Part shown: one piece after another, positions 19,811-57,590 of the stretch
Position numbering within the stretch: the first letter of the stretch is position 1
Layout of the letters: every line of letters starts with the position of its first letter
From: Octopus sinensis
Taxonomy: Eukaryota
Direction of reading: 5' to 3'
Assembly: GCF_006345805.1 (NCBI RefSeq)
Contig: NC_043006.1
Coordinates: 65,782,001-65,846,000 of the forward strand
DNA: 64,000 bases
Notes under the pieces: generated by a model
Databases searched by the model: none
What the model saw: the letters and a program-made list of their open reading frames with translations, nothing else
What the model was told of the DNA's origin: nothing
Program-made: the position numbers and the translations under genes

Positions 19811-19914
19811 GAGAAAGTTGAAAGTTGAAAAGGTGTCAAAAGTTTCTTTTAGATATATGTATTGTGTAATTAAAACAAGTGGAGAATAATCTTATTGTAT
19901 AAATACATTAATAC

Positions 19915-19999
19915 ATACATACCTGTATGCATACATACATACATACATACATACATACATACACACATACATATATGCATACATACATGTATGCATACA

Positions 20000-20031
<32 letters not shown>

Positions 20032-20111
20032 CACAAACATATATGCATGCATACATACATACATACATGTATGCATGCATACATACATACATGCATGCAT
20101 GCATACATACA

Positions 20112-20147
<36 letters not shown>

Positions 20148-20230
20148 TACACATACATACATGCATACATACATACATACATGCATGTATACATTCATAC
20201 ATACATACATACATACATACATACATACAA
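19915..20230 (+). repeat. (CATA)n microsatellite
   Basis: Long imperfect CATA array. Confidence 0.95.
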
Positions 20231-20905
20231 ACAAAAAAAAAACTAACCTGCAGACACACAGACACAGATATCATGAAGTCGAGCACACGCCCTTTCAAGC
20301 TTACTCACAATTAACACAATCGGTGTCTAACTTTTGTTATAAAAAAAACATATTGGTGTTGCACTCAACTCCCTGTGATTACATTTATGATTCTATAAAC
20401 AGCACTACGCCCCAAAATAACAATGTGTGTGTTCAAAGCTTATATACATATGCATACATACATGCATACTTACATACATATATATACATACATGTATACA
20501 CACATATACATACATACATGTATACACAGATATACATACATGTATACAGATATACATACATGGCACGTAAACAGCACCTTTCGAACGTGGCCGATGCCAG
20601 CACCGCCTTGACTGGCTTCTGTGCCCGTGGCATGTTACCTGCTGTGCTTGGGGAGACCTATTGAGTCAAGTACATCAACATCAAAATAAATATCAAATGG
20701 AAATTGTAGTTGTGATACCTGTGCTGGTGGCACGTAAAAAGCACCCACTACACTCACGGAATGGTTGGCATTAGGAAGGGCATCAAGCTGTAGAAACACT
20801 GCCAGATCAGACTGGAGCCTGGCGCAGCCTCCTGGCTTCCCAGACCCTGGTCGAACCATCCAACCCGTGCTAGCATGGAAAACGGACGTTAAACGATGAT
20901 GATGA

Positions 20906-20965
<60 letters not shown>

Positions 20966-21069
20966 CATACATACATATACATACATACATACATACATAT
21001 TATATATATATATAATATATATATATTATATATATATATACATACATACATACATACATATATACATTC

Positions 21070-21154
<85 letters not shown>

Positions 21155-24247: not shown

Positions 24248-25879
24248 ACTTTCTCACCTTCCCAAGCATTAAACTAATACACCTCTTTTGTTGTTTATAC
24301 ACTTGTCTTTGTCTTTTGTTTTTTGTAAATCCCAACTATATGTGTGTGTGTGTATTTGTGTGTCTGTATCTGTCCCCCCACCATCGCTTGGCAACCAATG
24401 TTGGAGTGTTTACATCCCTGTAACTTAGCGGTTCAGCTAAAGAAAATGATAGAATAAGTACTAAGCTTACAAAGAATAAGTCCTGGGGTCCATTTGTTTG
24501 ACTAAAGGTGGTGCTCCTGCATGGCCACAGTGAAATGACTGAAATAAATATAAGAACAAAAGAACAAAAGAATACCTATATCTTCAATCTCGTATTTGTT
24601 TCAGTCATTTGACTGCGGCCATGCTGGAGCATTGCCTTGAAGAATTTTTAGTTGATTGAATTGAGCTTGGTACTTATTTTATCGGTTTCTTTTGTCAAAC
24701 TGCTAAGTTACAAGAATGTAAACTCACCAATACAAGTTATAAAGCAGTGGTGGTGATGGTAGTGGTGGGGACAAAGAACGTTACAACATACACACACGCA
24801 TGCATGCACATATGCATATACATACACACGAAACACATACAAATACACAGACACACAGATACATACAAGCACGCATAAATACATACACAAACACACACAC
24901 ACACACATGTAGATAAGACATACATACGCATACAAACATATATATACACACACTACATCACACACACATATACATGCAGATACAAACATATATACATACA
25001 AAGACACACACACACACAACACACACACACACATAGCAAGCTTCTTTCTGTTTCCCTCTACCAAATTCCTTTACAAGACTTGGTCTGCCTGGAGCTATAT
25101 AGTAGAAAACATTTGCTCAAGGTGCCACACAGTGGGACTGAACCCAGAACCATGTGGTTGGGAAACACACTTCTTACCTCACAGCCGTGCCCTCAATAGG
25201 CTTCTTTCAGTTTTCCTCAACAAAACTCACTCACAAGGCTTTGGTTGGCCAGGGTCTATAATAGAAGATGTTTACATAAGCTGCCTCACAGAGAAATTGA
25301 ACCCAAGACCCCATGGTTCTAACCTACACAGCCAAACCAAGACTGAGAACAGTTGATAAACGGCACTCTGTCGGTTACGATGACGAGGGTCCCACTTGAT
25401 CCGATCAACAGAACAGCCTGCTTGTGAAATTAACGTGCAAGTGGCTGAGTATTCCACAGACATGTATACCCTTAATGTAGTTCTCAGAGAGATTAAGCGT
25501 GACACAGAATGTGACAAGGCTGGCCCTTTGAAATACAGGTACAACAGGAACAGGAAGAAAGAGTGAGAGAAAGTGTTTCTGCTCAATAAACATTCACAAC
25601 GCCTGTATGGGAATCGAAACCGCAAACCTATGACCACAAGTCTGTTGCACTAACCACTAAGCCATTGTGCCTCCACAGCTGATAATACACAACAACCCAA
25701 CATACACATTTTCAGGGTTTATTTTCTTATAAAGCATATTTATATAGAATAGAGATTAATAATGAAGTTCTGACATTTCCTTGTGTTTTTCCTTCATGAA
25801 AATGGGTGGGGAACATCGTTTCTGTCACGATTTACAATGGATCCAGAATGCAATGTTGAGTTGGTTGACAAAAAGTTTG

Positions 25880-26614
25880 TATGTGTATATGATGTATGTG
25901 TGTGCATGTGTGTGCGTGTGTGTGTGTGTGTGTGTATAAGTGTGTGTATATGTGTGTTTGTATGTGTATATGTCTATCTGCATGTGTGTGTGTATGTGTA
26001 TCTGCATGTGTGTGTGTGTGTATCTGCATGTGTGTGTGGTGTGTGTGTATGTGTGTGTCTGTGTGTGTGTATGTGTATATATCTATCTGCATGTGTGTAT
26101 GTGTGTGTGTATCTGCATGTGTGTGTGTATGTGTGTGTGTATGTGTGTGTATGTGTGTGTCTGTGTGTTTGTATGTGTATATGTCTATGTGTGTGTGTGA
26201 ATGTTTGTGTGGTGTGTGTGTGCATGTATGTGTGTGTGTAAGCATGTGTGTTTGTATATGTTTATGTCAGTATCTGCATGTGTGTGTGAGTGTGTATGTG
26301 TGTGCAGTGTGTGTGTTTGAATGTGTATATATATGTCTGTATCTGCATGTGTATGTGTGTGTATGTGTATGTGGTATGTGTATGTGTATTTGCATGTGTA
26401 TATATGTCTGTATCTGCATGTGTGTGTGGTGTATGTGTGTGTTTGTATGTATATATATATATGTCTGTATTTGCATGTGTGTGTGTGTGATATGTGTGTG
26501 TGAGCATGTATGTGTCTGTGAGCATGTGTGTTTGTATGTTTATATGTCTGTATCTGCATGTGTGTGTGCAAATGTGTATGTGTGTGTGGTGTGTATGTGT
26601 ATGTGTATGTGGTA

Positions 26615-26669
<55 letters not shown>

Positions 26670-27350
26670 TTGCATGTGTGTGTGTGTGTGTGTATCTGCA
26701 TGTGTGTGTGTATGGTGTGTGTGTATGTGTGTGTATGTGTGTGTCTGTGTGTTTGTATGTGTATATGTCTATGTGTGTGTGTGAATGTTTGTGTGGTGTG
26801 TGTGTGTGTGTGCATGTATGTGTGTGTGTAAGCATGTGTGTTTGTATATGTTTATGTCAGTATCTGCATGTGTGTGTGAGTGTGTATGTGTGTGCAGTGT
26901 GTGTGTTTGAATGTGTATATATATGTCTGTATCTGCATGTGTATGTGTGTGTATGTGTATGTGGTATGTGTATGTGTATTTGCATGTGTATATATGTCTG
27001 TATCTGCATGTGTGTGTGGTGTATGTGTGTGTTTGTATGTATATATATATATGTCTGTATTTGCATGTGTGTGTGTGTGATATGTGTGTGTGAGCATGTA
27101 TGTGTCTGTGAGCATGTGTGTTTGTATGTTTATATGTCTGTATCTGCATGTGTGTGTGCAAATGTGTATGTGTGTGTGGTGTGTATGTGTATATATGTCT
27201 GTATCTGCACATGTATGTGTGTGTGTATATATGTATGTGGTGCGTGTGTGTGCATTTGTATGTGTATATGTCTGTATCTGCATATGTGTGTATGTGTGCA
27301 TATGTGCATACATATGTGCATGTGCATGCATGTGTGCACATGTGTAAATA
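25880..27350 (+). repeat. Compound (TG)/(TATG) microsatellite with internal 590-bp direct duplication
   Basis: Marker GTAAGCATGTGTGTTTG at about 26238 and 26828. Confidence 0.9.
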
Positions 27351-28480
27351 TATTTGAAACCAAACTCACTGCTGTATTTTCAGGTAAGAATTTCTGAAAA
27401 TGCTCAATAATTTTGTATGGCCATATCAGAATGCTAATTAATATAAACAGCTAAATCAGAATGTAATTAATGTAAACAATAAGACTTAAAAAGAAAACAA
27501 ATAATGAAATATATTTATTAAAAATATGATTTTATTTTATTATACATTTATTTTCACTTATACTTTCTAATTTTAGCCCAAGGTCAGAATTTTGATGGAG
27601 GTGGTGGTGGTGGGGGGACAGTTGATGAAAGGATGAACGGCAAAGTCTACCTTGGCAGCATTTGAACTCAGAATGTAAATAGCCAGAAGAAATGCAGTTG
27701 AGTCTTTTGTTGTGGCACCTGTGCTGGCACTACATGATGGCACCTGTGCTAACACCACATAAAAGGCACCAATATTGGCGTCACGTAAAAGGCACCACAA
27801 AAGAGCACCTGTGTTGGTGCCATGTTAAAGACACCCAGGTACACTGTGTAAGGTGGTTGGTGTTAGGAAGGGCATCCGGCTCTAAAACCCATACCGTAAC
27901 AGATGACTCGACCCTAGTCTAGCTCTCTGGCTTGCCAACTCCCATCTAACCACCCAACACATACCAGCATGGAAAACGGACATTGAATGATGATGACGAC
28001 AACGACGACGACGACGACGATGATGATAATGATGTGTTAATGCTTCTGCCAGCTTCTTGACTCACTGAGACTAATTAAACTGACTTAATTACCATTTATT
28101 TTAATTTATATAAACTTGTGGTTTATATTTCGTTTTATTTTATCTTATAGTTTAAACACACACATACATACACACACACTTTGTTCTTTAATCAGCAGAA
28201 AAGTTGTAATTGTTTGGTAAGTGCCATGCCTGGAACTCTTAAGCAACTCTCATAAATCATCCGTCCCCCACTCCTCAAAAGCAATGAATGCATTTATGTA
28301 TTCAGTTCTGTTTCTCCTGCTTGTTCCACATACATATATGTGTGTGTGTTTGCGTTTATATATATATATATATATACCGGAGTAAACACATAAATGTGAA
28401 ACAAGGTGGAAAAAAGAGTACTCAAATACCAGTGGTAGAGTAATATGCTTTATTTTAAGCAGCAGAAAATTCAACAAAAT

Positions 28481-41932: not shown

Positions 41933-42548
41933 TCTATCTATCTATCTTTTTATCGAACTATCTATCTAGCTAAGTGTCTATCTGTCTGTCTGTCTATCTA
42001 TCTATCTGTTTATCTATCTATTTGTTTGTCTATCTATCTATCTATCTAGCTAGCTATGTGTCTGTCTATCTACCTATCTATCTACTTACCTACCTGTCTA
42101 TCTACCTATCTATCTACCAACCTACCTACCTATCTGTCTATCAATCTTTTTATTGAACTATCTATGTGTCTATCTATCTATCTGTTTGTCTATCTATCTA
42201 TCTATCTATCTATCTATGTGTCTGTCTATCTACCTACCTATCTACTTACCTACCTGTCTATCTACCAACCTACCTACCTATCTATCTATCTATCTTTTTG
42301 TCTATCAATCTATCTATCTTTTTATTGAACTATCTATCTATGTGTCTATCTGTCTATCTATCTATCTGTTTATCTATCTATTTGTTTGTCTATCTATCTA
42401 TCTAGCTATGTGTCTGTCTATCTACCTATCTATCTACTTACCTACCTGTCTATCTACCTATCTATCTACCAACCTACCTACCTATCTATCTATCTGTCTA
42501 TCAATCTTTTTATTGAACTATCTATGTGTCTATCTGTCTATCTGTTTG

Positions 42549-42617
<69 letters not shown>

Positions 42618-42750
42618 GTGTCTGTCTATCTACCTATCTATCTACCTGTCTATCTACCTATCTATCTACCAACCTACCTACCTATCTATCTATCTTTTTG
42701 TCTATCAATCTATCTATCTTTTTATTGAACTATCTATCTATGTGTCTATC
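41933..42750 (+). repeat. (TCTA)n-derived higher-order repeat
   Basis: TTTTTAT(C/T)GAACTATCTAT and CTACCAACCTACC blocks recur about 5 times within TCTA. Confidence 0.9.
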
Positions 42751-44459
42751 ACGAGAGCTGGGATGCGGGAGGAGCGTGTCTGCATACGCGGATGACGTCA
42801 CCGTCATAGTGTCGAGCTACGAGCACATCGAGCTGGTCGGCGAGACACTGAAAGAATACGAAGCGGTAACGGGAGCAAAAATTAACCGGGAAAAGTCAGT
42901 GGGCTTGCGGCTCGGCACCTGGAGAAGCAAGCCCATGCCGTCCAACAGCGTCTCCATCGTGGGACGCTGGACGACGGACCGGTTAAATTGCTCGGGGTCT
43001 GGTTCGGTCCGGACCTCCAAATGGAGAAGAACTGGGGCGAGATAACGACTAGGGTGGCTACTCTCACCCAGAAATGGACTGAGAGAAAGCTATCCCTAAA
43101 AGGTCGGGCGGAGGTGGCAAACGCGTACATCGCATCCGTCATCGAGTATCGTCTGACCGTCGTGCCTTGTCCCGACCCTACCATCACCAAACTGGAACGC
43201 ATACTCTTCCGCTTCTTGTGGAAGGGAAACGTTCCGATGGTTAGGCGATCCATTTGCTGCCAACACCCGCTAAATGGAGGGCTGGGCATGCCGTGGTTGA
43301 TGATGCGCAGACATGCGCTGAGACTGCGACATCTCCGGCGCTTCATAGACAACGGTGAACAGGGGTGGTCGCCTTTTGTGCGGCGCGCTTTCCCGCAGCT
43401 CGTCTCCTTGGACGAACTACAGTCATGGATCAAGCAGAGACCGAGGCTAGGCGAATGGCACCGCGAGTGTCGCGTTGCTCTCAAGCAACTCTGCCGTCCG
43501 GGATCGAACTTGTGCGACTCCATCACAACAAAGGCATTCTATAGAGGATTAGTGGAGGGGAGGTGCGACGACGAACTCGGGCAGAGTCTGGGCGTCGACG
43601 AGGAACACCTGACCCGCCTGTTCAGGACAACTTTCGGGCCGGGACCTATGAACAATCACCAAAGATCCCTGGCCTGGCAGTGCTATCGAGAAGCATTACC
43701 TGTTCGGGATAAGCTCTACAGACACGGTTCCAGACACACTGGACCGACTTGCCCGAGATGCGGTCAGAGCGACGAAACCGTTCTGCACGCACTCGTGCAA
43801 TGTCCAACCATTTCCGACCTGTGGGCTTATGCCGAACGGCTGCTGTCACGTGTGGGACGAATCCGCCTATCGGCCGAGTCTATCGTGAGAATTGCTCTGC
43901 CCCCTTCCCTCAACCGGGAAGGCAAGGCAGTTTTCATCGTACTGGTGGCCATGGTGAAAGAATGTGTGTGGTGGACTCGAGCGAAAGGATTAGAGACAAA
44001 CACTTACCTCTCTGGCCAATCGCTCATCAACTTTTTCAAGTACCACTTGAAAAGGAAGGTGAGAATGGAGAGGGAAGTTTTGTCTCGCGAAAGATTAAAA
44101 AAAAGATGGGTGAATGTTGCAAAGATGGTGCGTGCTAGTAACGAAACCATTTTGAGCATGATCCTGTAGATCGTAAAAAAGAAAGAAAGAGAGCATTTTT
44201 GACCTCATGTGTCTATTTCCTCCCTGACTGGGGTTCCCGTGGTCTTTTCTGTAGGCTTTTCTTCCCACGGATGAACCCAATCTTGTTATATCAATGTTTA
44301 CACCATTATTTCTGTGATACACGATTTTCTTTTTTTCCTCCTCTCGATCCCTTTTGATCGCAATCTTACATTTTTTTTTTTTTTCCACCCTCGAAAAGAA
44401 AAGCTCTGCATTTGTATTTGTCCCCTCTGTATTCAGCCCTGTGTGGCTAATAAAAGAAA
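42751..44459 (+). mobile_element. 5'-truncated L1/Tx1-clade non-LTR retrotransposon (RT C-terminus + zf-RVT), one frameshift
   Basis: YADD at 42785-42796, then [20 protein letters not shown] and the CCHC finger CPRCGQSDETVLHALVQCP. 1-nt frameshift near 42970. Stop at 44169, AATAAA at 44449-44454. GC-rich, flanked by (TCTA)n. Confidence 0.9.
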
Positions 44460-46829: not shown

Positions 46830-47489
46830 TTATACTCGGCCAGTGGTTGGAAATGAGGTAAAGGATGACTCGTCTGAGAAAATAACATTCTTCCACTGCT
46901 CTAGGGACCAATTCTGTAGGTTTTTACTCCACTCTAAATACTTTGCAATGTTTGTTTTTGAAAGTAGTGGTTTTTTGATTGCAGCCCTCCCATGATATCC
47001 AGCTTTGTGTAGCACCCGGTGAACAGTTTTTGTAGAAATTTGGTTCTCTAGGTGGTCATTAAGCTCTGCAGTAATTTTGGGAGCTGTACCTGTGTGATCC
47101 TTTCTAACAATTTGCATAAGAGTCTGATGGTCCCTATCTGAAAGCTTTGGTTTTCTTCCAGGGTTTTGTTTTGACAAAGAGGTATTTCCCTCTTTCTCAA
47201 AGGCTGTCGCTACTTTCAAGGCAGTGCATCTTGATACACCAAACATTTTATCTGTTTTGGTTACGCTAGACCCTGCCATATGAGCACCAACAATTTAACC
47301 TCTCTGAAAGTCTGATAGATCTGTCATTTTAATGAATTTTAATTACTTTTTTCTGATGATATCTGAAAAGAAACAACAATTTTAGCAAAACATTAAAAAC
47401 ATAAAAATAAACAAGCTTTTGGTGATTTTATGATTTTATAGATATTTCAAAATTATGATGCCAGGTGTTCCCATTATTTTGTCCAACCC

Positions 47490-53628: not shown

Positions 53629-54659
53629 CACTTTCTTCAGAAGATACATTCATTATATGAGAGGCTGACTGTGCCAGCTGTAATGGAACTGTGTCCGAGT
53701 GCTATATAGATGTGTGTGTATGTGTTGTTTGTAATATATATGCTAGGAGCACACAAAATCTCTGCTTATATATTTCCAGCAGTTCATTTGGCAGATGTAT
53801 GTACGTGTGTGTGTGTGTGTGTGTGTTTGTGTGTACAAGATAAATACTGCACTTGGAATGCATGCATGTGTGCATATTGTAGGTACATGTTAAACTGGAC
53901 AAGTACTAACAACAATCGAGTCTACCTTTGTGTGTGTGTTATATAATTGTGTGTAGAAAGACTCCAACTGATCTTTCCTTCATAGTGCCAATGGGGGTGG
54001 AAATCTGATGTTGGGGAGGGGCACATTAAAAAAAAAAAAAATGGTGGTATAGGTGGGTGGCAGAAAGCTAAGTCCACTCCCGCCCTCCTAAAGCATGTGT
54101 GTGCATGTCGAGATTTTAATTTTCAGACAGGCTCGTTAAGTAATAATGGTGATGGTGGAGCGTTTCTTATCATCCTGTCGTTAATATATAGCAAGCAAAA
54201 GAAAATTATATATTTCTCGAAGGGGGAGGGGGTGAGAGAGAAAGATAGAAGGGGTCAAAGTGACAAGAGTTGAAGATTAGGATGTGGGTGGCCTGGAAGG
54301 TAACATTAAGCAACTTCTTTTTTTTCACCCCTCCCAGTGCGAGGGGAATTATCGATAACAGAATAGAGGAGGAGAGTGTGAGAGAAGGTGCATTCTAGTT
54401 ATCGCCTTAATCCTTTTGTAGGAAAAAAAAAAAGACAAGGATTAGGAGTTTAATAAATTAGTTTTTTTTTTGTTTTTTTTTTTACATTTTGTCATATTAA
54501 TGAAAAAGTAAACTAGATAAGAGTGGCTTATTTCTGAGGGGTATTAAATATTTTTTTTTATAGGTTGTTAATTGCTGTTTGCAAGTTACCAAACTTCTGG
54601 TACCAACACAGAGAGTGAGAGGAAAGGAAATATATCAGTCCACAATCGCCGAAAAGTTT

Positions 54660-55730
54660 TTATTTGGTACTCGGCGTTGCAGGGGGTGTCAGTAATAAAT
54701 TGCCAACTCCGTCGACAGGTTCCGTAGTGAAAGACTTCTGCAAAATACTTTGTGGGGTAGACGGTATGACCGTGGGGCCTTTCTTTGGGTGTTTCAGTAG
54801 GACAGCATTCGAATAGGGTTGATGTAGGTGGGCGCTCATTGCAACGTTCGGTCGACGCGGGTAGGCGATAAGGGTAGGTTTTGTCGGCAGTGGCGCCGTT
54901 TGCGTTTGTAAATATTCTGAGGCCATTTCTGACGATCCATTCCCGTTGTCTGTAGCTTCGTTGCCCTGAGTTTCCAGTTGATAGTTTTCAATGTACTGAC
55001 TTGGGTCTACAGGACTGGCAGCATGAGAGTATGGGTAGCCAGTTGCAGCTCCAGTAGCAGCTTGAGCCTGGTACATAAACTCGGGTGCGTACTGGACGCT
55101 AGGTAAGTTAGCAGCATAGTAGTAAGCCGGGTTGGCGTTCAGGTACGGACTTGTGGCAGACGGTTGGGCAATAGTCCAGTGAGCGGCAGGTGGCAGCCAC
55201 TGAGTAGAACCGAGATGGTAGGAATAATTGGTAGCCGGCGTAATATAGCTATTCTGAGGTTGTGAAAGTAAGACAGTACTGGTTGGATAGGCGGAAGTTG
55301 GTGCCACTGTATAGTTGTCGTCGGCTTGCAACAAGGTCATGGCATTTTGATAGGCATAGCCGAGCCCGTTGTAATAAACTGCATTTGGGGTTACTTCTCT
55401 GGCGTCAACCGTGGGAGATGGACTCTGGTGTGGTATGTGACGCTTGACAGCGGGACCGATATTAAGCCTTCGGCCACGAAAGAAAATTGGTTCCCCATCT
55501 TTGGACGCGAGACGTTCGGCGTCCTCTTGTTTTTCAAAAGTAATAAAAGCGTAGCCACGAGAGGCGCCTCCTTTGTCGATGATGATTTTCGAGTCTTTGA
55601 CCGATCCGTGCGAGGTGAAGAAAGATTTTAGGTCATTTTCAGTCGTATCTCTTGGAATTCCACCAACAAAAATCCTTTGAGGTATATAGGTACCGAACTG
55701 AGCACCGGTGGTTACCGTACCGCTGGTCAT
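54660..55730 (-). CDS. boule: Boule/DAZ-family RNA-binding protein, single uninterrupted 356-aa ORF
   Basis: N-terminal GTYIPQRIFVGGI (RNP2), RGYAFITF (RNP1) and RRLNIGPAVKR closely parallel BOLL GTVIPNRIFVGGI...KGYGFVTF...KKLNIGPAIRK. The post-RRM GLGYAYQNAMTLL resembles the boule GYPYTYHNGVAYF motif, and the C-terminus is Y/P/Q/A/S/T-rich. Stop TAA at 54662-54660. Confidence 0.93.
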   Translation of the reverse strand: MTSGTVTTGAQFGTYIPQRIFVGGIPRDTTENDLKSFFTSHGSVKDSKIIIDKGGASRGYAFITFEKQEDAERLASKDGEPIFFRGRRLNIGPAVKRHIPHQSPSPTVDAREVTPNAVYYNGLGYAYQNAMTLLQADDNYTVAPTSAYPTSTVLLSQPQNSYITPATNYSYHLGSTQWLPPAAHWTIAQPSATSPYLNANPAYYYAANLPSVQYAPEFMYQAQAATGAATGYPYSHAASPVDPSQYIENYQLETQGNEATDNGNGSSEMASEYLQTQTAPLPTKPTLIAYPRRPNVAMSAHLHQPYSNAVLLKHPKKGPTVIPSTPQSILQKSFTTEPVDGVGNLLLTPPATPSTK

Positions 55731-56704
55731 AGCGGAAGCCGAAGAAACTGTGTTGTGTAAGGCTGGCTGGGTCTGGTGTGTGACACTGGTAGCAGCAACA
55801 GATAGTGATATAGAGAAAGAAAGAAAAATAAAGAAATTTAGTATACAGACAAAGCTTATTCGTTTAATAGACTAGGTGTTTTTAATTTTTTTTTTTTTAA
55901 GAATTAAATTAAAACAATTACCTATACACATACAAAAAAAACAGCCTATAGAAAGAGCCCCACACCTCTGTTTGTGAATGAAGTCTGAATTTTATAGCAT
56001 TTGCTATCTAGGTGGAATTTCCTTTCTTTCTTTTTTTTTTAAACCGATAGTTAGGGCTAACACCCCTTTTAGAATAAATGTGTGTGATGGAGAGAGAATC
56101 TAAATTTGGACTCGGCTGCAGCCAGCTTTTCAATAAATAAATTTGAATAGAAACAAAAAAAAGTTATTGTTACCGAAAGTAGGGAAATATATACATATTT
56201 TTTAATAATGATAGCACAAAATAATGCAGAGGGTAAAGTTCATTAAAAAAAAAAAAACCAAGCAACTTTTAACTTGGTAACAGCTAAACGAGAGATTTAG
56301 TGAGTACAAATGGTAAAAGATTAGTTGGAAGAATGAACTTTCGACAGAAATATAATGGTTCGAAAGAAAATATATATTTGTAATTATCTATTAATAATGC
56401 TTTACTTTTTAGTTCTTCATTCTGAACACTGAATTCGTTTTTTTTTTTTTTTAATACATCTTCACTCAACAACCTGTAATACAAAATGTGGGTATGTATA
56501 TTTAATTATATGTATGTGTATATACTATATATATATATATATATATACATGTTTATACACATATTTACTGTGATTGAAAGGTAAACATTAATATATAAAG
56601 TTAAATTAAATACCTTTAGAATTGAATCGCAATTAAGGGTAACTTGAGCACGACACGCAAGCAATCAGGTACATACATAACGGATGTATGGAGCGACTAC
56701 TCAC

Positions 56705-56768
56705 CCTCAGCTTGGTTTCTAATCACAAGTGGGAAAGCAAAGTCCATGTTTGTTATTCGTGTCCACAT
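56705..56768 (-). other. Putative upstream (5') exon of boule, ending in a consensus donor
   Basis: Minus strand GAGG|GTGAGT with GT at 56704-56703. A matching acceptor (long pyrimidine tract then TACCAG|, AG at 55787-55786) lies 55 nt upstream of the boule ATG. The 5' boundary is unknown. Confidence 0.4.
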
Positions 56769-57469
56769 GGTGCTCTGTAACCACGTTTTACGTGATGAGC
56801 TGCATTCTTAGTTTTTCAACTTCTTATCCTTTCCCGATTCATTAAATATAAATCACAATTTCCTTGGAAAATTAAAAAAATTACTTCTTAAATATTTCAT
56901 AAAGTTAATGCTTTTCTGGATGATAAAATTATTATAATGTTAAAAATTACTTGATCGGTTCCCCACCTCTTGAAAAATTAAGGTATAGTGCATCAAAACT
57001 TAACGCCTACAGAAGCAAATTATGGAATGACATAACATACATCTTGTAATTACCTTTTTCTTTTAAGTTATACAGTATTACTATCCAGATTCATTTCAGA
57101 GGATAAATGCTATGCTTAAAATTCTTTATTAAATTTTCGCATAAATTGTTAAGAATGATAGAAATGTAATTTCTTCATTTGCTTCACGGCATACAAATTA
57201 TTACCGTTTTAATCTTCCATATTTTAACAATGCTGTACTTCATTTGTTCCCCTTCCTTTTCTGCATGCAAATATCTAAATTATTATTTGGTAGAAATTTA
57301 TTTTATTTTTCTTAAATGCTTATAGATGTTGGAAACAATTTCGAAAATTTTTGCTATTGTAATACTTGTGAAATTTTTTGAGTATGCAATAAACTTTTGA
57401 ATTTTATATGTTTTTTTTTATTCACTGCCTGAAACCGTCTTCACTAAGGTGAAAATGAAGCTGTATCAA

Positions 57470-57479
57470 AATATGGCGG
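57470..57479 (+). promoter_or_regulatory. YY1-like motif overlapping the LSM12 start codon
   Basis: AATATGGCGG fits AAnATGGCG, which is typical just downstream of housekeeping-gene TSSs. Confidence 0.45.
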
Positions 57480-57590
57480 ACAGTGAATGTTTCATTGTTG
57501 GAAGCCGGATTTCTTGCACCACCGTTTATAATGAGAAACTGGAAGGAGAGGTCGCTGCTTTCGACATAGGTACCAAATTGCTAATAATTA
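57473..57590 (+). CDS. LSM12: LSM12 homolog, first coding exon (39 codons + 1 nt; downstream exons not found in window)
   Basis: MADSECFIVGSRISCTTVYNEKLEGEVAAFDIGTKLLII aligns with the LSM12 N-terminus [34 protein letters not shown]. Similarity stops exactly at A|GTATCCTTTT. Confidence 0.88.

What the first reader, a model, noticed from the sequence alone, without database searches (positions are those of the whole stretch)
54660..55730. Intronless boule: probable functional retrogene of a germline regulator
Boule genes in bilaterians are typically multi-exon, with introns in the RRM. Here the whole RRM and tail are in one 1071-bp exon with no stops, in a genome of long, repeat-filled introns. 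RNP1 is slightly altered (RGYAFITF versus KGYGFVTF). This suggests a retroposed boule that either replaced or supplements the ancestral gene, an independent DAZ-family expansion analogous to DAZL/DAZ in vertebrates. No target-site duplication could be identified.
Basis: partly seen in the sequence, partly recalled or inferred. Interest (0 to 1): 0.75.

Follow-up and report, generated by a model that had tools for sequence, protein, structure and literature searches.

The report
Ancient retrocopied boule paralogue of coleoid cephalopods
This octopus reading frame is a working second copy of the germ-cell RNA-binding gene boule; it was most likely made from a spliced mRNA before octopuses and squids diverged, and it sits beside the original multi-exon gene's absence, i.e. 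at a new site, while that original gene is still kept elsewhere in the genome.

Summary
Window 54660-55730 (minus strand) is an uninterrupted 356-codon ORF. It encodes a Boule/DAZ-type protein with RNP1 RGYAFITF. The window comes from Octopus sinensis.

1. The gene is not intronless. Only the CDS is. Cuttlefish and squid mRNAs show a spliced non-coding 5' exon, and the acceptor and exon-1 block are conserved in Octopus.
2. The gene is not octopus-specific. Argonauta, Sepia pharaonis and two other decapods carry the same single-exon CDS at the same position, head-to-head with LSM12. It therefore predates the octopod-decapod split.
3. It supplements the ancestral gene rather than replacing it. 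A canonical multi-exon boule persists in O. sinensis. It spans 122 kb and lies beside a dynein heavy-chain gene, as in scallop and snail. The same canonical gene exists in other coleoids.

The copy lacks all eight or more parental introns within its CDS, including the three RRM introns conserved from cnidarians to humans. It is under purifying selection (dN/dS 0.07-0.19) and evolves about four times faster than the parent.

Function as a germline translational regulator is inferred, not shown. It is a new member of a known kind and of moderate interest.

The parts
54660..55730 (-). Complete CDS of the boule paralogue ('boule-B'): 356 codons plus stop, in a single coding exon
   Evidence: ORF listing. 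It is identical to the annotated O. sinensis protein P0001. It is 88% identical to Argonauta 'protein boule-like'. dN/dS is 0.07-0.11 against Argonauta.
55437..55694 (-). RRM domain (aa 13-98). RNP2 RIFVGGI is at 55656-55676 and RNP1 RGYAFITF is at 55536-55559
   Evidence: Pfam RRM_1 E=5.5e-17. DAZL RRM match in PDB by sequence. AF2 pLDDT is 80-96, and the five best fold hits are DAZL RRM. RNP1 variant census.
55329..55370 (-). Degenerate DAZ motif NGLGYAYQNAMTLL (aa 121-134)
   Evidence: It aligns with NGVPYTYQNGMAIF of canonical mollusc boule. Y125, Y127, Q128 and N129 are conserved columns.
54672..54692 (-). C-terminal LTPPATP motif (aa 347-353). This is an ancestral boule C-end kept in this copy but lost from canonical cephalopod boule
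   Evidence: The motif is present in all boule-B proteins and in oyster, scallop, chiton, nemertean, Owenia and Ciona boule. It is absent from all 24 cephalopod canonical isoforms.
55731..55785 (-). 5'UTR portion of the coding exon (55 nt). Exon 2 is predicted to start at 55785
   Evidence: The acceptor CTGTTGCTGCT(A/T)C(C/T)AG|TG is conserved in all four coleoid genomes. It is the acceptor actually used in Sepia pharaonis mRNA and in a second decapod mRNA. In Octopus it is inferred by homology only.
55786..56613 (-). Predicted 5'UTR intron (about 830 nt), with a polypyrimidine tract and AG at 55786-55830
   Evidence: Homology to the Sepia intron (donor AAAAAAT|GTACGT, acceptor TTCTAG|TGCGTC, about 760 nt) defined by RNA contigs against the genome. 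The Octopus donor CTAAAG|GTATTT is conserved in Argonauta. There is no Octopus RNA evidence.
56614..56790 (-). Predicted non-coding exon 1 (5' limit unknown). It contains a block conserved across coleoids, including the invariant 16-mer AACATGGACTTTGCTT at 56735-56750
   Evidence: The block is conserved in Octopus, Argonauta, Sepia and a second decapod genome, and is present inside two decapod mRNAs.
54449..54454 (-). Candidate poly(A) signal ATTAAA, 206 nt after the stop codon
   Evidence: The motif AATTTATTAAAC is conserved between Octopus and Argonauta. Sepia and decapod-2 mRNAs end in poly(A) about 400 nt after their stop. The true Octopus 3' end is not determined.
57473..57590 (+). Exon 1 of the neighbouring gene LSM12, transcribed divergently. 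Its ATG is about 680 bp from boule-B exon 1. It is the presumed partner of a shared bidirectional promoter region
   Evidence: Pfam LSM12_LSM E=1e-15. LSM12 is the head-to-head upstream neighbour in Octopus, Argonauta and Sepia. Its exon 1 is also conserved in the ENA decapod contig.

Best explanation
The ORF is the single coding exon of 'boule-B', a second boule gene shared by coleoid cephalopods.

Origin (inferred). It most likely arose when an mRNA of the canonical multi-exon boule ('boule-A') was reverse-transcribed and inserted at a new site next to LSM12. This happened in the cephalopod lineage before octopods and decapods split.

Expression. Splicing is shown in decapods and inferred in Octopus. 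Promoter sharing is inferred. The copy is expressed from a non-coding exon about 0.85 kb upstream. That exon lies within about 700 bp of the divergently transcribed LSM12 start, so the two genes probably share a bidirectional promoter region. The exon is spliced to an acceptor 55 nt before the ATG.

Protein (shown). It keeps a DAZL-like RRM, a degenerate DAZ motif and a disordered Y/P/Q-rich tail. It has been held under purifying selection while evolving about four times faster than boule-A.

Mechanism (inferred from the DAZ family). It binds U/G-rich sites in 3'UTRs of germ-cell mRNAs through the RRM. It modulates their translation through partners recruited by the DAZ motif and tail, such as PABP. 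Its role is probably partitioned with boule-A.
For: Identity and integrity:
- ORF, RRM and DAZL-like fold.
- Full-length collinearity with mollusc boule through the DAZ motif and C-terminus.

Parent still present:
- O. sinensis XP_036370351-54, plus O. bimaculoides, O. vulgaris, Argonauta and S. pharaonis canonical boule.
- The O. sinensis gene spans 122.6 kb on another scaffold, next to a dynein heavy-chain gene. Pecten and Batillaria boule also sit next to a dynein heavy-chain gene.
- Argonauta boule-A spans 55.6 kb with 10 or more coding exons. Its RRM introns are at the same codons as in Pecten.
- These RRM introns are conserved from sea anemone to human (PMC2904765).

The copy lacks them all:
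- Parental intron sites map to boule-B aa 28/29, 59/60, 78/79, about 99, about 113-117, 144, 188 and 242, all inside one exon.

Age and synteny:
- The single-exon CDS sits head-to-head with LSM12 in Octopus, Argonauta and Sepia pharaonis. The ENA decapod contig is collinear.
- A and B lie on different sequences in four species.

Expression:
- Sepia and decapod-2 RNA contigs are spliced at a GT-AG 5'UTR intron and end in poly(A).

Selection:
- dN/dS is 0.07-0.11 (Octopus vs Argonauta) and 0.15-0.19 (Sepia vs ENA decapod). It is low in both the RRM and the tail.
- Octopod-decapod identity is 64% for B and 91% for A.

Cephalopod-lineage origin:
- The C-terminal (T/S)ILQKS motif is shared only by cephalopod A and B.
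- The whole B family collapses to one 50% representative, with no more distant B-like cluster.

Precedent and family mechanism:
- The amphioxus SYCP1 retrogene has de novo 5'UTR exons and a co-opted bidirectional promoter (PMC5803294).
- DAZL binds 3'UTRs and recruits PABP (PMC4966976).
Against: - No poly(A) relic or target-site duplication survives. The only flanking direct repeat is Octopus-specific and marginal against shuffles.
- The gene is not fully processed-looking. Its 5'UTR intron ends within a few nucleotides of where ancestral intron 1 sits: right after the ancestral ATG, with 73 nt (Sepia B) against 75 nt (Pecten) to the conserved FGT/YGT codons. A simple 'processed copy plus newly recruited exon' model does not predict this.
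- The NJ tree places boule-B on a long, unresolved branch (24% bootstrap). It is not demonstrably sister to cephalopod boule-A. A shared-derived-state count is weak, at 3 of 35.
- No Octopus transcript of this gene was found among assembled RNA contigs. Octopus expression, its exon 1 and its donor are therefore inferred by homology.
- Orthology of the dynein neighbour across species was not verified. Its orientation relative to boule differs between Octopus and Pecten/Batillaria.
- Germline expression and RNA targets were not testable here.
Confidence: 0.78

Rival explanations
1. Semi-processed retrocopy. The template was an incompletely spliced boule pre-mRNA that still carried intron 1. On this reading, today's 5'UTR intron and non-coding exon 1 descend from the parental exon 1 and intron 1. 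The ancestral ATG at the end of exon 1 later decayed, and a downstream ATG took over.
For: - In Pecten, intron 1 is phase 0, immediately after the ATG (CAAAATG|GTATGT). The same boundary (M|SSS(A)DVSP) holds in cephalopod boule-A.
- In Sepia boule-B the acceptor lies 73 nt upstream of the FGT codons, against 75 nt in Pecten. The now-untranslated stretch still reads ...ITPGP..., against VSPCP in boule-A.
- Decapod boule-B exon 1 ends in ...TTTAAAAA(G/T)|GT, which resembles ...AAAATG|GT.
- The new start codon lies 11-19 codons downstream of the boundary.
Against: - Exon-1 similarity between Sepia boule-A and boule-B mRNAs is no better than shuffled sequence (score 18 against a shuffle mean of 18).
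- The distance match is loose in other species: 91 nt in Octopus, and longer in decapod-2.
- The N-terminal region is low-complexity S/T/P-rich, so the alignment there is soft.
- This model does not by itself explain the position next to the LSM12 start.
Confidence: 0.25
2. DNA-level duplication, or translocation of a duplicate, of the whole boule gene. All introns downstream of intron 1 were then lost, for example by recombination of the duplicate with a 5'-incomplete cDNA.
For: - It explains retention of an intron at the ancestral intron-1 position together with loss of every downstream intron. This 3'-biased pattern is what cDNA-mediated intron loss predicts.
- Both paralogues are retained in all coleoids sampled.
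Against: - It needs two rare events (an inter-chromosomal DNA duplication and a complete cDNA conversion) where retroposition needs one.
- No parental neighbours were carried to the new site. tblastn of six-frame ORFs from the Pecten and Batillaria flanks against the window found no dynein, and nothing else beyond one low-complexity hit at E about 9e-4.
- No intermediate with some introns was seen in any coleoid.
Confidence: 0.12
3. A recent, Octopus-lineage retrocopy that replaced the ancestral boule, or alternatively a non-functional processed pseudogene with a fortuitously open frame.
For: The frame is a single exon without introns in a repeat-rich region. No Octopus transcript contig was recovered.
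Against: - Orthologues with the same structure and synteny occur in Argonauta and in decapods.
- The parental gene is still present in O. sinensis.
- dN/dS is 0.07-0.19 with dS 0.56-0.83.
- Orthologues are spliced and polyadenylated mRNAs in more than 20 RNA-seq assemblies.
Confidence: 0.02

Closest known systems
Canonical Boule (BOLL / boule), including cephalopod boule-A (e.g. O. sinensis XP_036370351-54)
   Same: - A single N-terminal RRM with a DAZL-like fold.
- RNP2 (P)xRIFVGGI.
- A DAZ motif, a Y/P/Q-rich tail, and the C-terminal LVKH... and LTPPxTP motifs.
- Full-length collinearity.
   Different: - It has no introns in the CDS, against 10 or more coding exons.
- RNP1 is (A/G)SRGYAFITF instead of VSKGYGF(V/I)TF.
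- It is about 38% identical to boule-A of the same lineage.
- It evolves about four times faster.
- It lies in a different chromosomal neighbourhood: LSM12 rather than a dynein heavy chain.
Vertebrate DAZL and primate DAZ (lineage-specific boule-derived paralogues)
   Same: It is an independent, lineage-restricted duplicate of boule that is kept alongside boule. The RRM fold is closest to mouse DAZL structures.
   Different: From my own knowledge, DAZL and DAZ arose by DNA-level duplication or transposition and keep the multi-exon structure. Here the CDS is intron-free, and the copy most likely arose through RNA. It is not orthologous to DAZL: it groups within lophotrochozoan boule.
Amphioxus SYCP1 retrogene (PMC5803294)
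   Same: Both are meiosis or germline genes whose retrocopy has a single coding exon. Both acquired spliced non-coding 5' exon(s). Both sit head-to-head with a neighbour whose promoter region is probably used bidirectionally.
   Different: In amphioxus the parent gene was lost (retrogene replacement). Here the parent is retained. The amphioxus 5'UTR has four exons. Here one upstream exon is documented.
Rodent preproinsulin I (Ins1), the textbook semi-processed retrogene (own knowledge, not checked here)
   Same: The copy lacks the downstream parental intron(s) but retains an intron in the 5'UTR at the parental position. This would apply if the positional match of the boule-B acceptor to ancestral intron 1 reflects descent.
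   Different: For Ins1, homology of the retained intron and upstream flank is demonstrable. Here exon-1 and intron sequence homology to the parent is not detectable.
Lineage-specific boule paralogues in other invertebrates (flatworm macbol1-3, annelid Boule2, two loci in the snail Bradybaena)
   Same: These are extra boule copies with possible sex-specific sub-functions (PMC13072017; names).
   Different: None of these is reported, in the papers I searched, as an intron-free retrocopy. Their gene structures were not examined here.

Membership tests
Boule / DAZ family | Single RRM near the N-terminus with a DAZ-family fold | tested here: met
   RRM_1 at aa 20-83, E=5.5e-17. DAZL RRM is matched over aa 13-98. 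The AF2 RRM has pLDDT 80-96, and the five best PDB fold hits are mouse DAZL.
Boule / DAZ family | Boule signature RNP2 PNRIFVGG and RNP1 GVSKGYGFVT (Shah et al. 2010, PMC2904765) | tested here: inconclusive
   RNP2 reads PQRIFVGG (7 of 8). RNP1 reads GASRGYAFIT (6 of 10), with the aromatic Y and F positions kept. The G-to-A change also occurs in starfish boule. The gene is recognisably derived but does not match the consensus.
Boule / DAZ family | DAZ motif downstream of the RRM | tested here: met
   NGLGYAYQNAMTLL aligns with NGVPYTYQNGMAIF, and Y125, Y127, Q128 and N129 are conserved columns. The motif is degenerate.
Boule / DAZ family | Closest relatives by sequence are boule proteins, over the full length | tested here: met
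   All hits outside its own clade are mollusc and other boule or boule-like proteins. In the tree it falls inside lophotrochozoan boule.
Boule / DAZ family | Conserved exon-intron junctions inside the RRM (exons 2-5; PMC2904765) | tested here: not met
   The CDS is uninterrupted. Pecten, Batillaria and Argonauta boule-A have the three RRM introns. This is the expected signature of an RNA-mediated copy. It is not evidence against descent from boule.
Boule / DAZ family | Germline-restricted or germline-biased expression and a role in gametogenesis | not testable with these tools
   RNA contigs show transcription in decapods. The tissue of origin could not be determined.
Processed retrogene | Lacks the introns of a multi-exon parental gene that exists elsewhere in the genome | tested here: met
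   The parent is present in the same assembly on another scaffold and spans 122.6 kb. Eight or more parental intron sites fall inside the single coding exon.
Processed retrogene | Located at a new genomic site without the parental neighbours | tested here: met
   B is beside LSM12 in three species. A is beside a dynein heavy chain, as in scallop and snail. No dynein or other shared flank gene is found in the window.
Processed retrogene | Poly(A) tract at the 3' end and flanking target-site duplication | tested here: inconclusive
   A-rich tracts follow the stop codon, but they lie inside the present 3'UTR. A 51-nt flanking direct repeat exists only in Octopus and is marginal against shuffles. 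These marks are not expected to survive an event this old.
Processed retrogene | No introns at all at birth; any intron is secondarily acquired | tested here: inconclusive
   A 5'UTR intron exists. Its acceptor is close to the ancestral intron-1 site. It may therefore be inherited (semi-processed) or newly recruited.
Retrogene using a neighbour's bidirectional promoter | First exon close to, and divergent from, the first exon of a neighbouring gene, with promoter activity in both directions | tested here: inconclusive
   The geometry is met. The exon-1 block at 56614-56790 (minus) lies about 680 bp from the LSM12 ATG at 57473 (plus), and this arrangement is conserved in coleoids. There is no CpG island. 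Promoter activity was not testable.

The most novel reading that the evidence does not exclude
Boule-B is a roughly 300-million-year-old semi-processed retrogene. It was copied from a partly spliced boule pre-mRNA, so that ancestral intron 1 survives as its 5'UTR intron. The two coleoid paralogues have since divided the ancestral boule functions. B alone keeps the ancient C-terminal LTPPxTP motif, and A alone keeps the consensus RNP1. One possibility is a division between male and female germlines or between meiotic stages. That would be a protostome parallel to the vertebrate BOULE/DAZL split, reached by a different duplication route.
Probability: 0.2. Interest if true: 0.6.

Novelty: new member of a known kind. 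Interest (0 to 1): 0.45.

Why it matters
Boule is the ancestral animal gametogenesis regulator. Its gene structure is among the most conserved known, with RRM introns shared from cnidarians to humans. Extra family members such as DAZL and DAZ are central to vertebrate fertility.

This locus shows that coleoid cephalopods made their own second family member. They most likely did so by retroposition, and they have kept it under selection since before octopuses and squids diverged. It is also a clean example of how a retrocopy becomes expressed: through a spliced non-coding exon beside a neighbour's promoter.

The locus offers a paired system, a slow canonical A and a fast B with complementary motif loss. 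This can be used to study sub-functionalisation of germline RNA-binding proteins in animals where CRISPR is now feasible.

For annotation there are two practical points. Database names for the two genes are inconsistent ('boule-like', 'DAZ protein 3', 'RNA binding protein fox-1 homolog 1'). The upstream exon of this gene is also missing from the CDS-only models.

Tried and rejected
1. The first protein search with the window protein alone found no second cephalopod boule. A short N-terminal profile listed only proteins under about 290 aa and also missed it. Only the full-length profile found boule-A. The earlier working idea that the copy had replaced the parent was dropped.

2. In-situ intron loss at the ancestral locus was considered because the acceptor matches ancestral intron 1. 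It was rejected as the main model once boule-A was found at the dynein-adjacent locus.

3. Target-site duplication or poly(A) relic. A 51-nt direct repeat flanks the exon (54433-54483 and 55847-55897). It scored above shuffles in one test. In gene orientation with local-block shuffles it was marginal, with one shuffle exceeding it, and it is absent from Argonauta, Sepia and the ENA decapod. It occurs only twice in the window. It was rejected as a TSD.

4. Homology of exon 1 between boule-A and boule-B mRNAs of Sepia was no better than shuffled sequence.

5. Phylogenetic placement of B as sister to cephalopod A. The NJ tree with 200 bootstraps is unresolved, probably because of long-branch effects. 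A shared-derived-residue count was not discriminating: 3 of 35, against 2 of 11 for nemerteans. Only the ILQKS motif supports a cephalopod-lineage origin.

6. A tblastn search for parental-flank genes (dynein and others) in the 64-kb window gave only one low-complexity hit at E about 9e-4, and no gene match.

7. A conserved uORF was considered to explain the invariant ATG-containing 16-mer in exon 1. The reading-frame length is not conserved: 5 codons in the ENA decapod, 16 in Octopus and 33 in Sepia. The question was left open.

8. Literature searches found no paper on cephalopod boule paralogues or on a boule retrogene. SRA run numbers could be tied to a tissue only for two Sepia esculenta larval runs that carry boule-A.

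9. The CpG-island check of the LSM12/boule-B intergenic region found none. The region is 21-41% GC.
Full report
**1. Source and observation**

The window is from Octopus sinensis, assembly GCA_006345805.1, chromosome CM016868.1, about 65.83 Mb. On the minus strand, 54660-55730 is an ATG-to-stop ORF of 356 codons. It is the longest ORF in the window that is not microsatellite or transposon sequence.

- Pfam finds one RRM at aa 20-83, E=5.5e-17.
- Among solved structures, the mouse DAZL RRM is matched end to end over aa 13-98.
- An AlphaFold model built on a 21-sequence alignment has a confident RRM at aa 11-100 (pLDDT 80-96) and a disordered tail.
- The five best PDB fold matches are all mouse DAZL RRM crystal structures (TM 0.83-0.87, rmsd 1.7-2.0 A, 38-39% identity).
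Among about 245 boule-family proteins retrieved, (A/G)SRGYAFITF occurs only in the 13 orthologues of this gene.

**2. The CDS is intron-free, but the gene is not**

Three RNA-derived Logan contigs of Sepia pharaonis (L005-L007) encode the orthologue. They align to the S. pharaonis genome in two blocks. The junction is a canonical intron of about 760 nt. The donor is AAAAAAT|GTACGT. The acceptor is TTCTAG|TGCGTC, 31 nt upstream of the ATG.

A second decapod's mRNA (L017) uses the same donor. L007 and L018 end in poly(A) about 400 nt after the stop, just past AATAAA.

The acceptor context CTGTTGCTGCT(A/T)C(C/T)AG|TG is conserved in all four coleoid genomes examined. In Octopus it places the start of the coding exon at window 55785, 55 nt before the ATG.

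The upstream exon contains a block conserved in Octopus, Argonauta, Sepia and the ENA decapod contig. It includes an invariant 16-mer at window 56735-56750. A donor, CTAAAG|GTATTT, is shared by Octopus and Argonauta and falls after window 56614.

The Octopus exon 1, donor and TSS are inferences. No Octopus transcript contig was recovered.

**3. It is not Octopus-specific**

- Argonauta hians has an 88% identical, 355-aa protein encoded by one uninterrupted ORF.
- Sepia pharaonis has a 347-aa orthologue, 64% identical, also one ORF.
- An ENA decapod contig has a collinear ORF.
- In Octopus, Argonauta and Sepia, the gene called immediately upstream, on the opposite strand, is LSM12.
- LSM12 exon 1 is at window 57473 onward on the plus strand (LSM12_LSM, E=1e-15). 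It is also conserved in the ENA contig.

The structure and position therefore predate the split of Octopodiformes and Decapodiformes. From my own knowledge, that split is usually dated to roughly 250-300 Myr ago.

**4. Other molluscs have the usual multi-exon boule**

- Pecten maximus boule spans 30 kb. Batillaria attramentaria boule spans 27 kb.
- tblastn maps 10 or more coding exons in each. The introns correspond to octopus residues 28/29, 59/60 (splitting RNP1 as SKG|YGF), 78/79 and about 100.
- Shah et al. 2010 report that these RRM junctions are conserved from sea anemone to human (PMC2904765).

**5. The parent is still there**

A full-length profile search found a second, canonical boule in cephalopods. 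Cluster look-ups identify the following:

| Species | Accessions |
|---|---|
| O. sinensis | XP_036370351-54 |
| O. bimaculoides | XP_014784796 and others |
| O. vulgaris | CAI9742249-53 |
| Argonauta hians | GAB1608973 |
| S. pharaonis | CAE1318732-3 |

- In Argonauta the gene spans 55.6 kb with 10 or more coding exons. Its introns are at the same RRM codons as in Pecten.
- In O. sinensis it spans 122.6 kb on a 20.3-Mb scaffold. The window gene is on the 105.9-Mb chromosome.
- The O. sinensis canonical gene lies 4.5 kb from the 3' end of a dynein heavy-chain gene. A dynein heavy-chain gene is also the neighbour of boule in Pecten and Batillaria.
- The orientation differs between species, and orthology of the dynein genes was not checked.
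- The window contains no dynein exon and no other parental-flank gene.

Aligning Argonauta boule-A to the window protein shows full-length collinearity. It places eight or more parental intron sites inside the single coding exon.

I call the canonical gene boule-A and the window gene boule-B.

**6. Function and selection**

| Comparison | dN | dS | dN/dS |
|---|---|---|---|
| Octopus vs Argonauta | 0.06 | 0.56-0.83 | 0.07-0.11 |
| Sepia vs ENA decapod | 0.11-0.12 | 0.61-0.73 | 0.15-0.19 |

The ratio is low in both the RRM and the tail.

- Octopod-decapod protein identity is 64% for B and 91% for A. B therefore evolves about four times faster while remaining constrained.
- B keeps the ancestral C-terminal LTPPxTP motif found in oyster, scallop, chiton, nemertean, Owenia and Ciona boule. 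All 24 cephalopod boule-A isoforms lack it.
- A keeps the consensus RNP1 that B has altered.
- This complementary loss suggests division of labour. No expression or functional data were available to test it.

By family analogy (DAZL binds 3'UTRs and recruits PABP; PMC4966976), B most likely acts as a germ-cell mRNA-binding translational regulator. This is inference.

**7. Origin**

Four features fit an RNA-mediated copy: loss of all CDS introns at once, a retained parent at the ancestral neighbourhood, a new chromosomal site, and a fast-evolving but constrained sequence.

The position beside LSM12, with a spliced non-coding exon about 680 bp from the LSM12 ATG, fits the known route by which retrocopies gain expression. 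The amphioxus SYCP1 retrogene is a close precedent (PMC5803294).

A cephalopod-lineage origin is supported by two results:
- The C-terminal (T/S)ILQKS motif is shared only by cephalopod A and B.
- An exhaustive HMMER search represents the whole B family by a single 50% representative, with no more distant B-like cluster.

The NJ tree itself is uninformative on this point. B is monophyletic (100% bootstrap) but sits on a long branch with unresolved placement. A shared-derived-state count is weak.

**8. An unexplained detail**

Pecten intron 1 is phase 0, immediately after the ATG. Cephalopod boule-A has the same M|SSS(A)DVSP boundary.

The boule-B acceptor lies almost exactly there. It is 73 nt upstream of the FGT codons in Sepia B, against 75 nt in Pecten. 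The untranslated stretch after the acceptor still reads ...ITPGP..., against VSPCP in A.

This would be expected if B inherited intron 1. Two routes could give that outcome: a semi-processed retrocopy, or a DNA duplicate whose downstream introns were erased by a cDNA.

Against this reading:
- Exon-1 sequence similarity to A is at shuffle level.
- The spacing is looser in Octopus, at 91 nt.
- The region is low-complexity.

I keep both as rivals.

**9. Hallmarks not found**

There is no credible TSD or poly(A) relic, as expected at this age.

**10. Novelty**

The protein is already in databases as 'boule-like'. I found no paper describing two boule genes in cephalopods or a retrocopied boule.

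Lineage-specific boule paralogues and functional germline retrogenes are both known kinds of thing. This is therefore a new member of a known kind and of moderate interest.

Noticed in passing
window 57473-57590 (+); also 56486-56584 (+): LSM12 exon 1 (MADSECFIVGS..., LSM12_LSM E=1e-15) starts at 57473. The deposited CDS model for this LSM12 gene instead begins at 56486, in a low-complexity ORF (MWVCIFNYMYV...) that overlaps the boule-B upstream region. This looks like a spurious first exon. The Sepia model starts at the conserved exon.
   Followed up: partly
window 56735-56750 (-), within 56614-56790: The invariant 16-mer AACATGGACTTTGCTT lies inside the non-coding exon 1 of boule-B. It is identical in Octopus, Argonauta, Sepia and a second decapod genome, and is present in two decapod mRNAs. 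It contains an ATG in good context, but the downstream reading frame is 5, 16 or 33 codons depending on the species. A nucleotide-level regulatory element seems more likely than a conserved uORF peptide.
   Followed up: partly
window 54433-54483 and 55847-55897 (+): A 51-nt direct repeat (76% identical, half of it a T-run) flanks the coding exon. One copy is in the 5'UTR intron and one is in the 3' flank over the ATTAAA signal. It is present only in Octopus and is marginal against local-composition shuffles. It is not a credible target-site duplication.
   Followed up: yes
window 42386-44169 (+): Remnant of a non-LTR retrotransposon ORF2 (RVT_1 E=2.6e-5, zf-RVT E=3.7e-8), preceded by a (YLS)n-like simple-repeat ORF.
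   Followed up: partly
window 46830-47279 (-): Tc1/mariner-type transposase N-terminal fragment (HTH_Tnp_Tc3_2, E=2e-17).
   Followed up: partly
window ~19870-21075 and ~25780-27400: Long TG/CA- and TA-rich microsatellite blocks. They generate the longest spurious ORFs in the window (C/V/Y- and H/T-rich 'proteins').
   Followed up: no
L010 28525-28614 (Argonauta boule-A); proteins P0182, P0184, P0185: Cephalopod canonical boule carries an extra segment, HMTTQLLADLYAQGAAEQV, right after the RRM and encoded by its own exon. It is absent from scallop boule and from boule-B. Either the retrocopy came from an isoform lacking it, or the exon was gained in boule-A after the duplication.
   Followed up: no
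proteins P0182 and P0270 (Argonauta hians): Argonauta has two near-identical canonical boule entries on different contigs (2.77 Mb and 5.38 Mb). This could be haplotigs or a recent duplicate.
   Followed up: no
database names, proteins P0243-P0247: The canonical octopus boule is variously named 'deleted in azoospermia protein 3', 'RNA binding protein fox-1 homolog 1' and 'boule-like' in RefSeq. The O. vulgaris copy of the window gene is called 'protein boule-like isoform X5' although it is a separate locus. These names could mislead gene-family counts.
   Followed up: no
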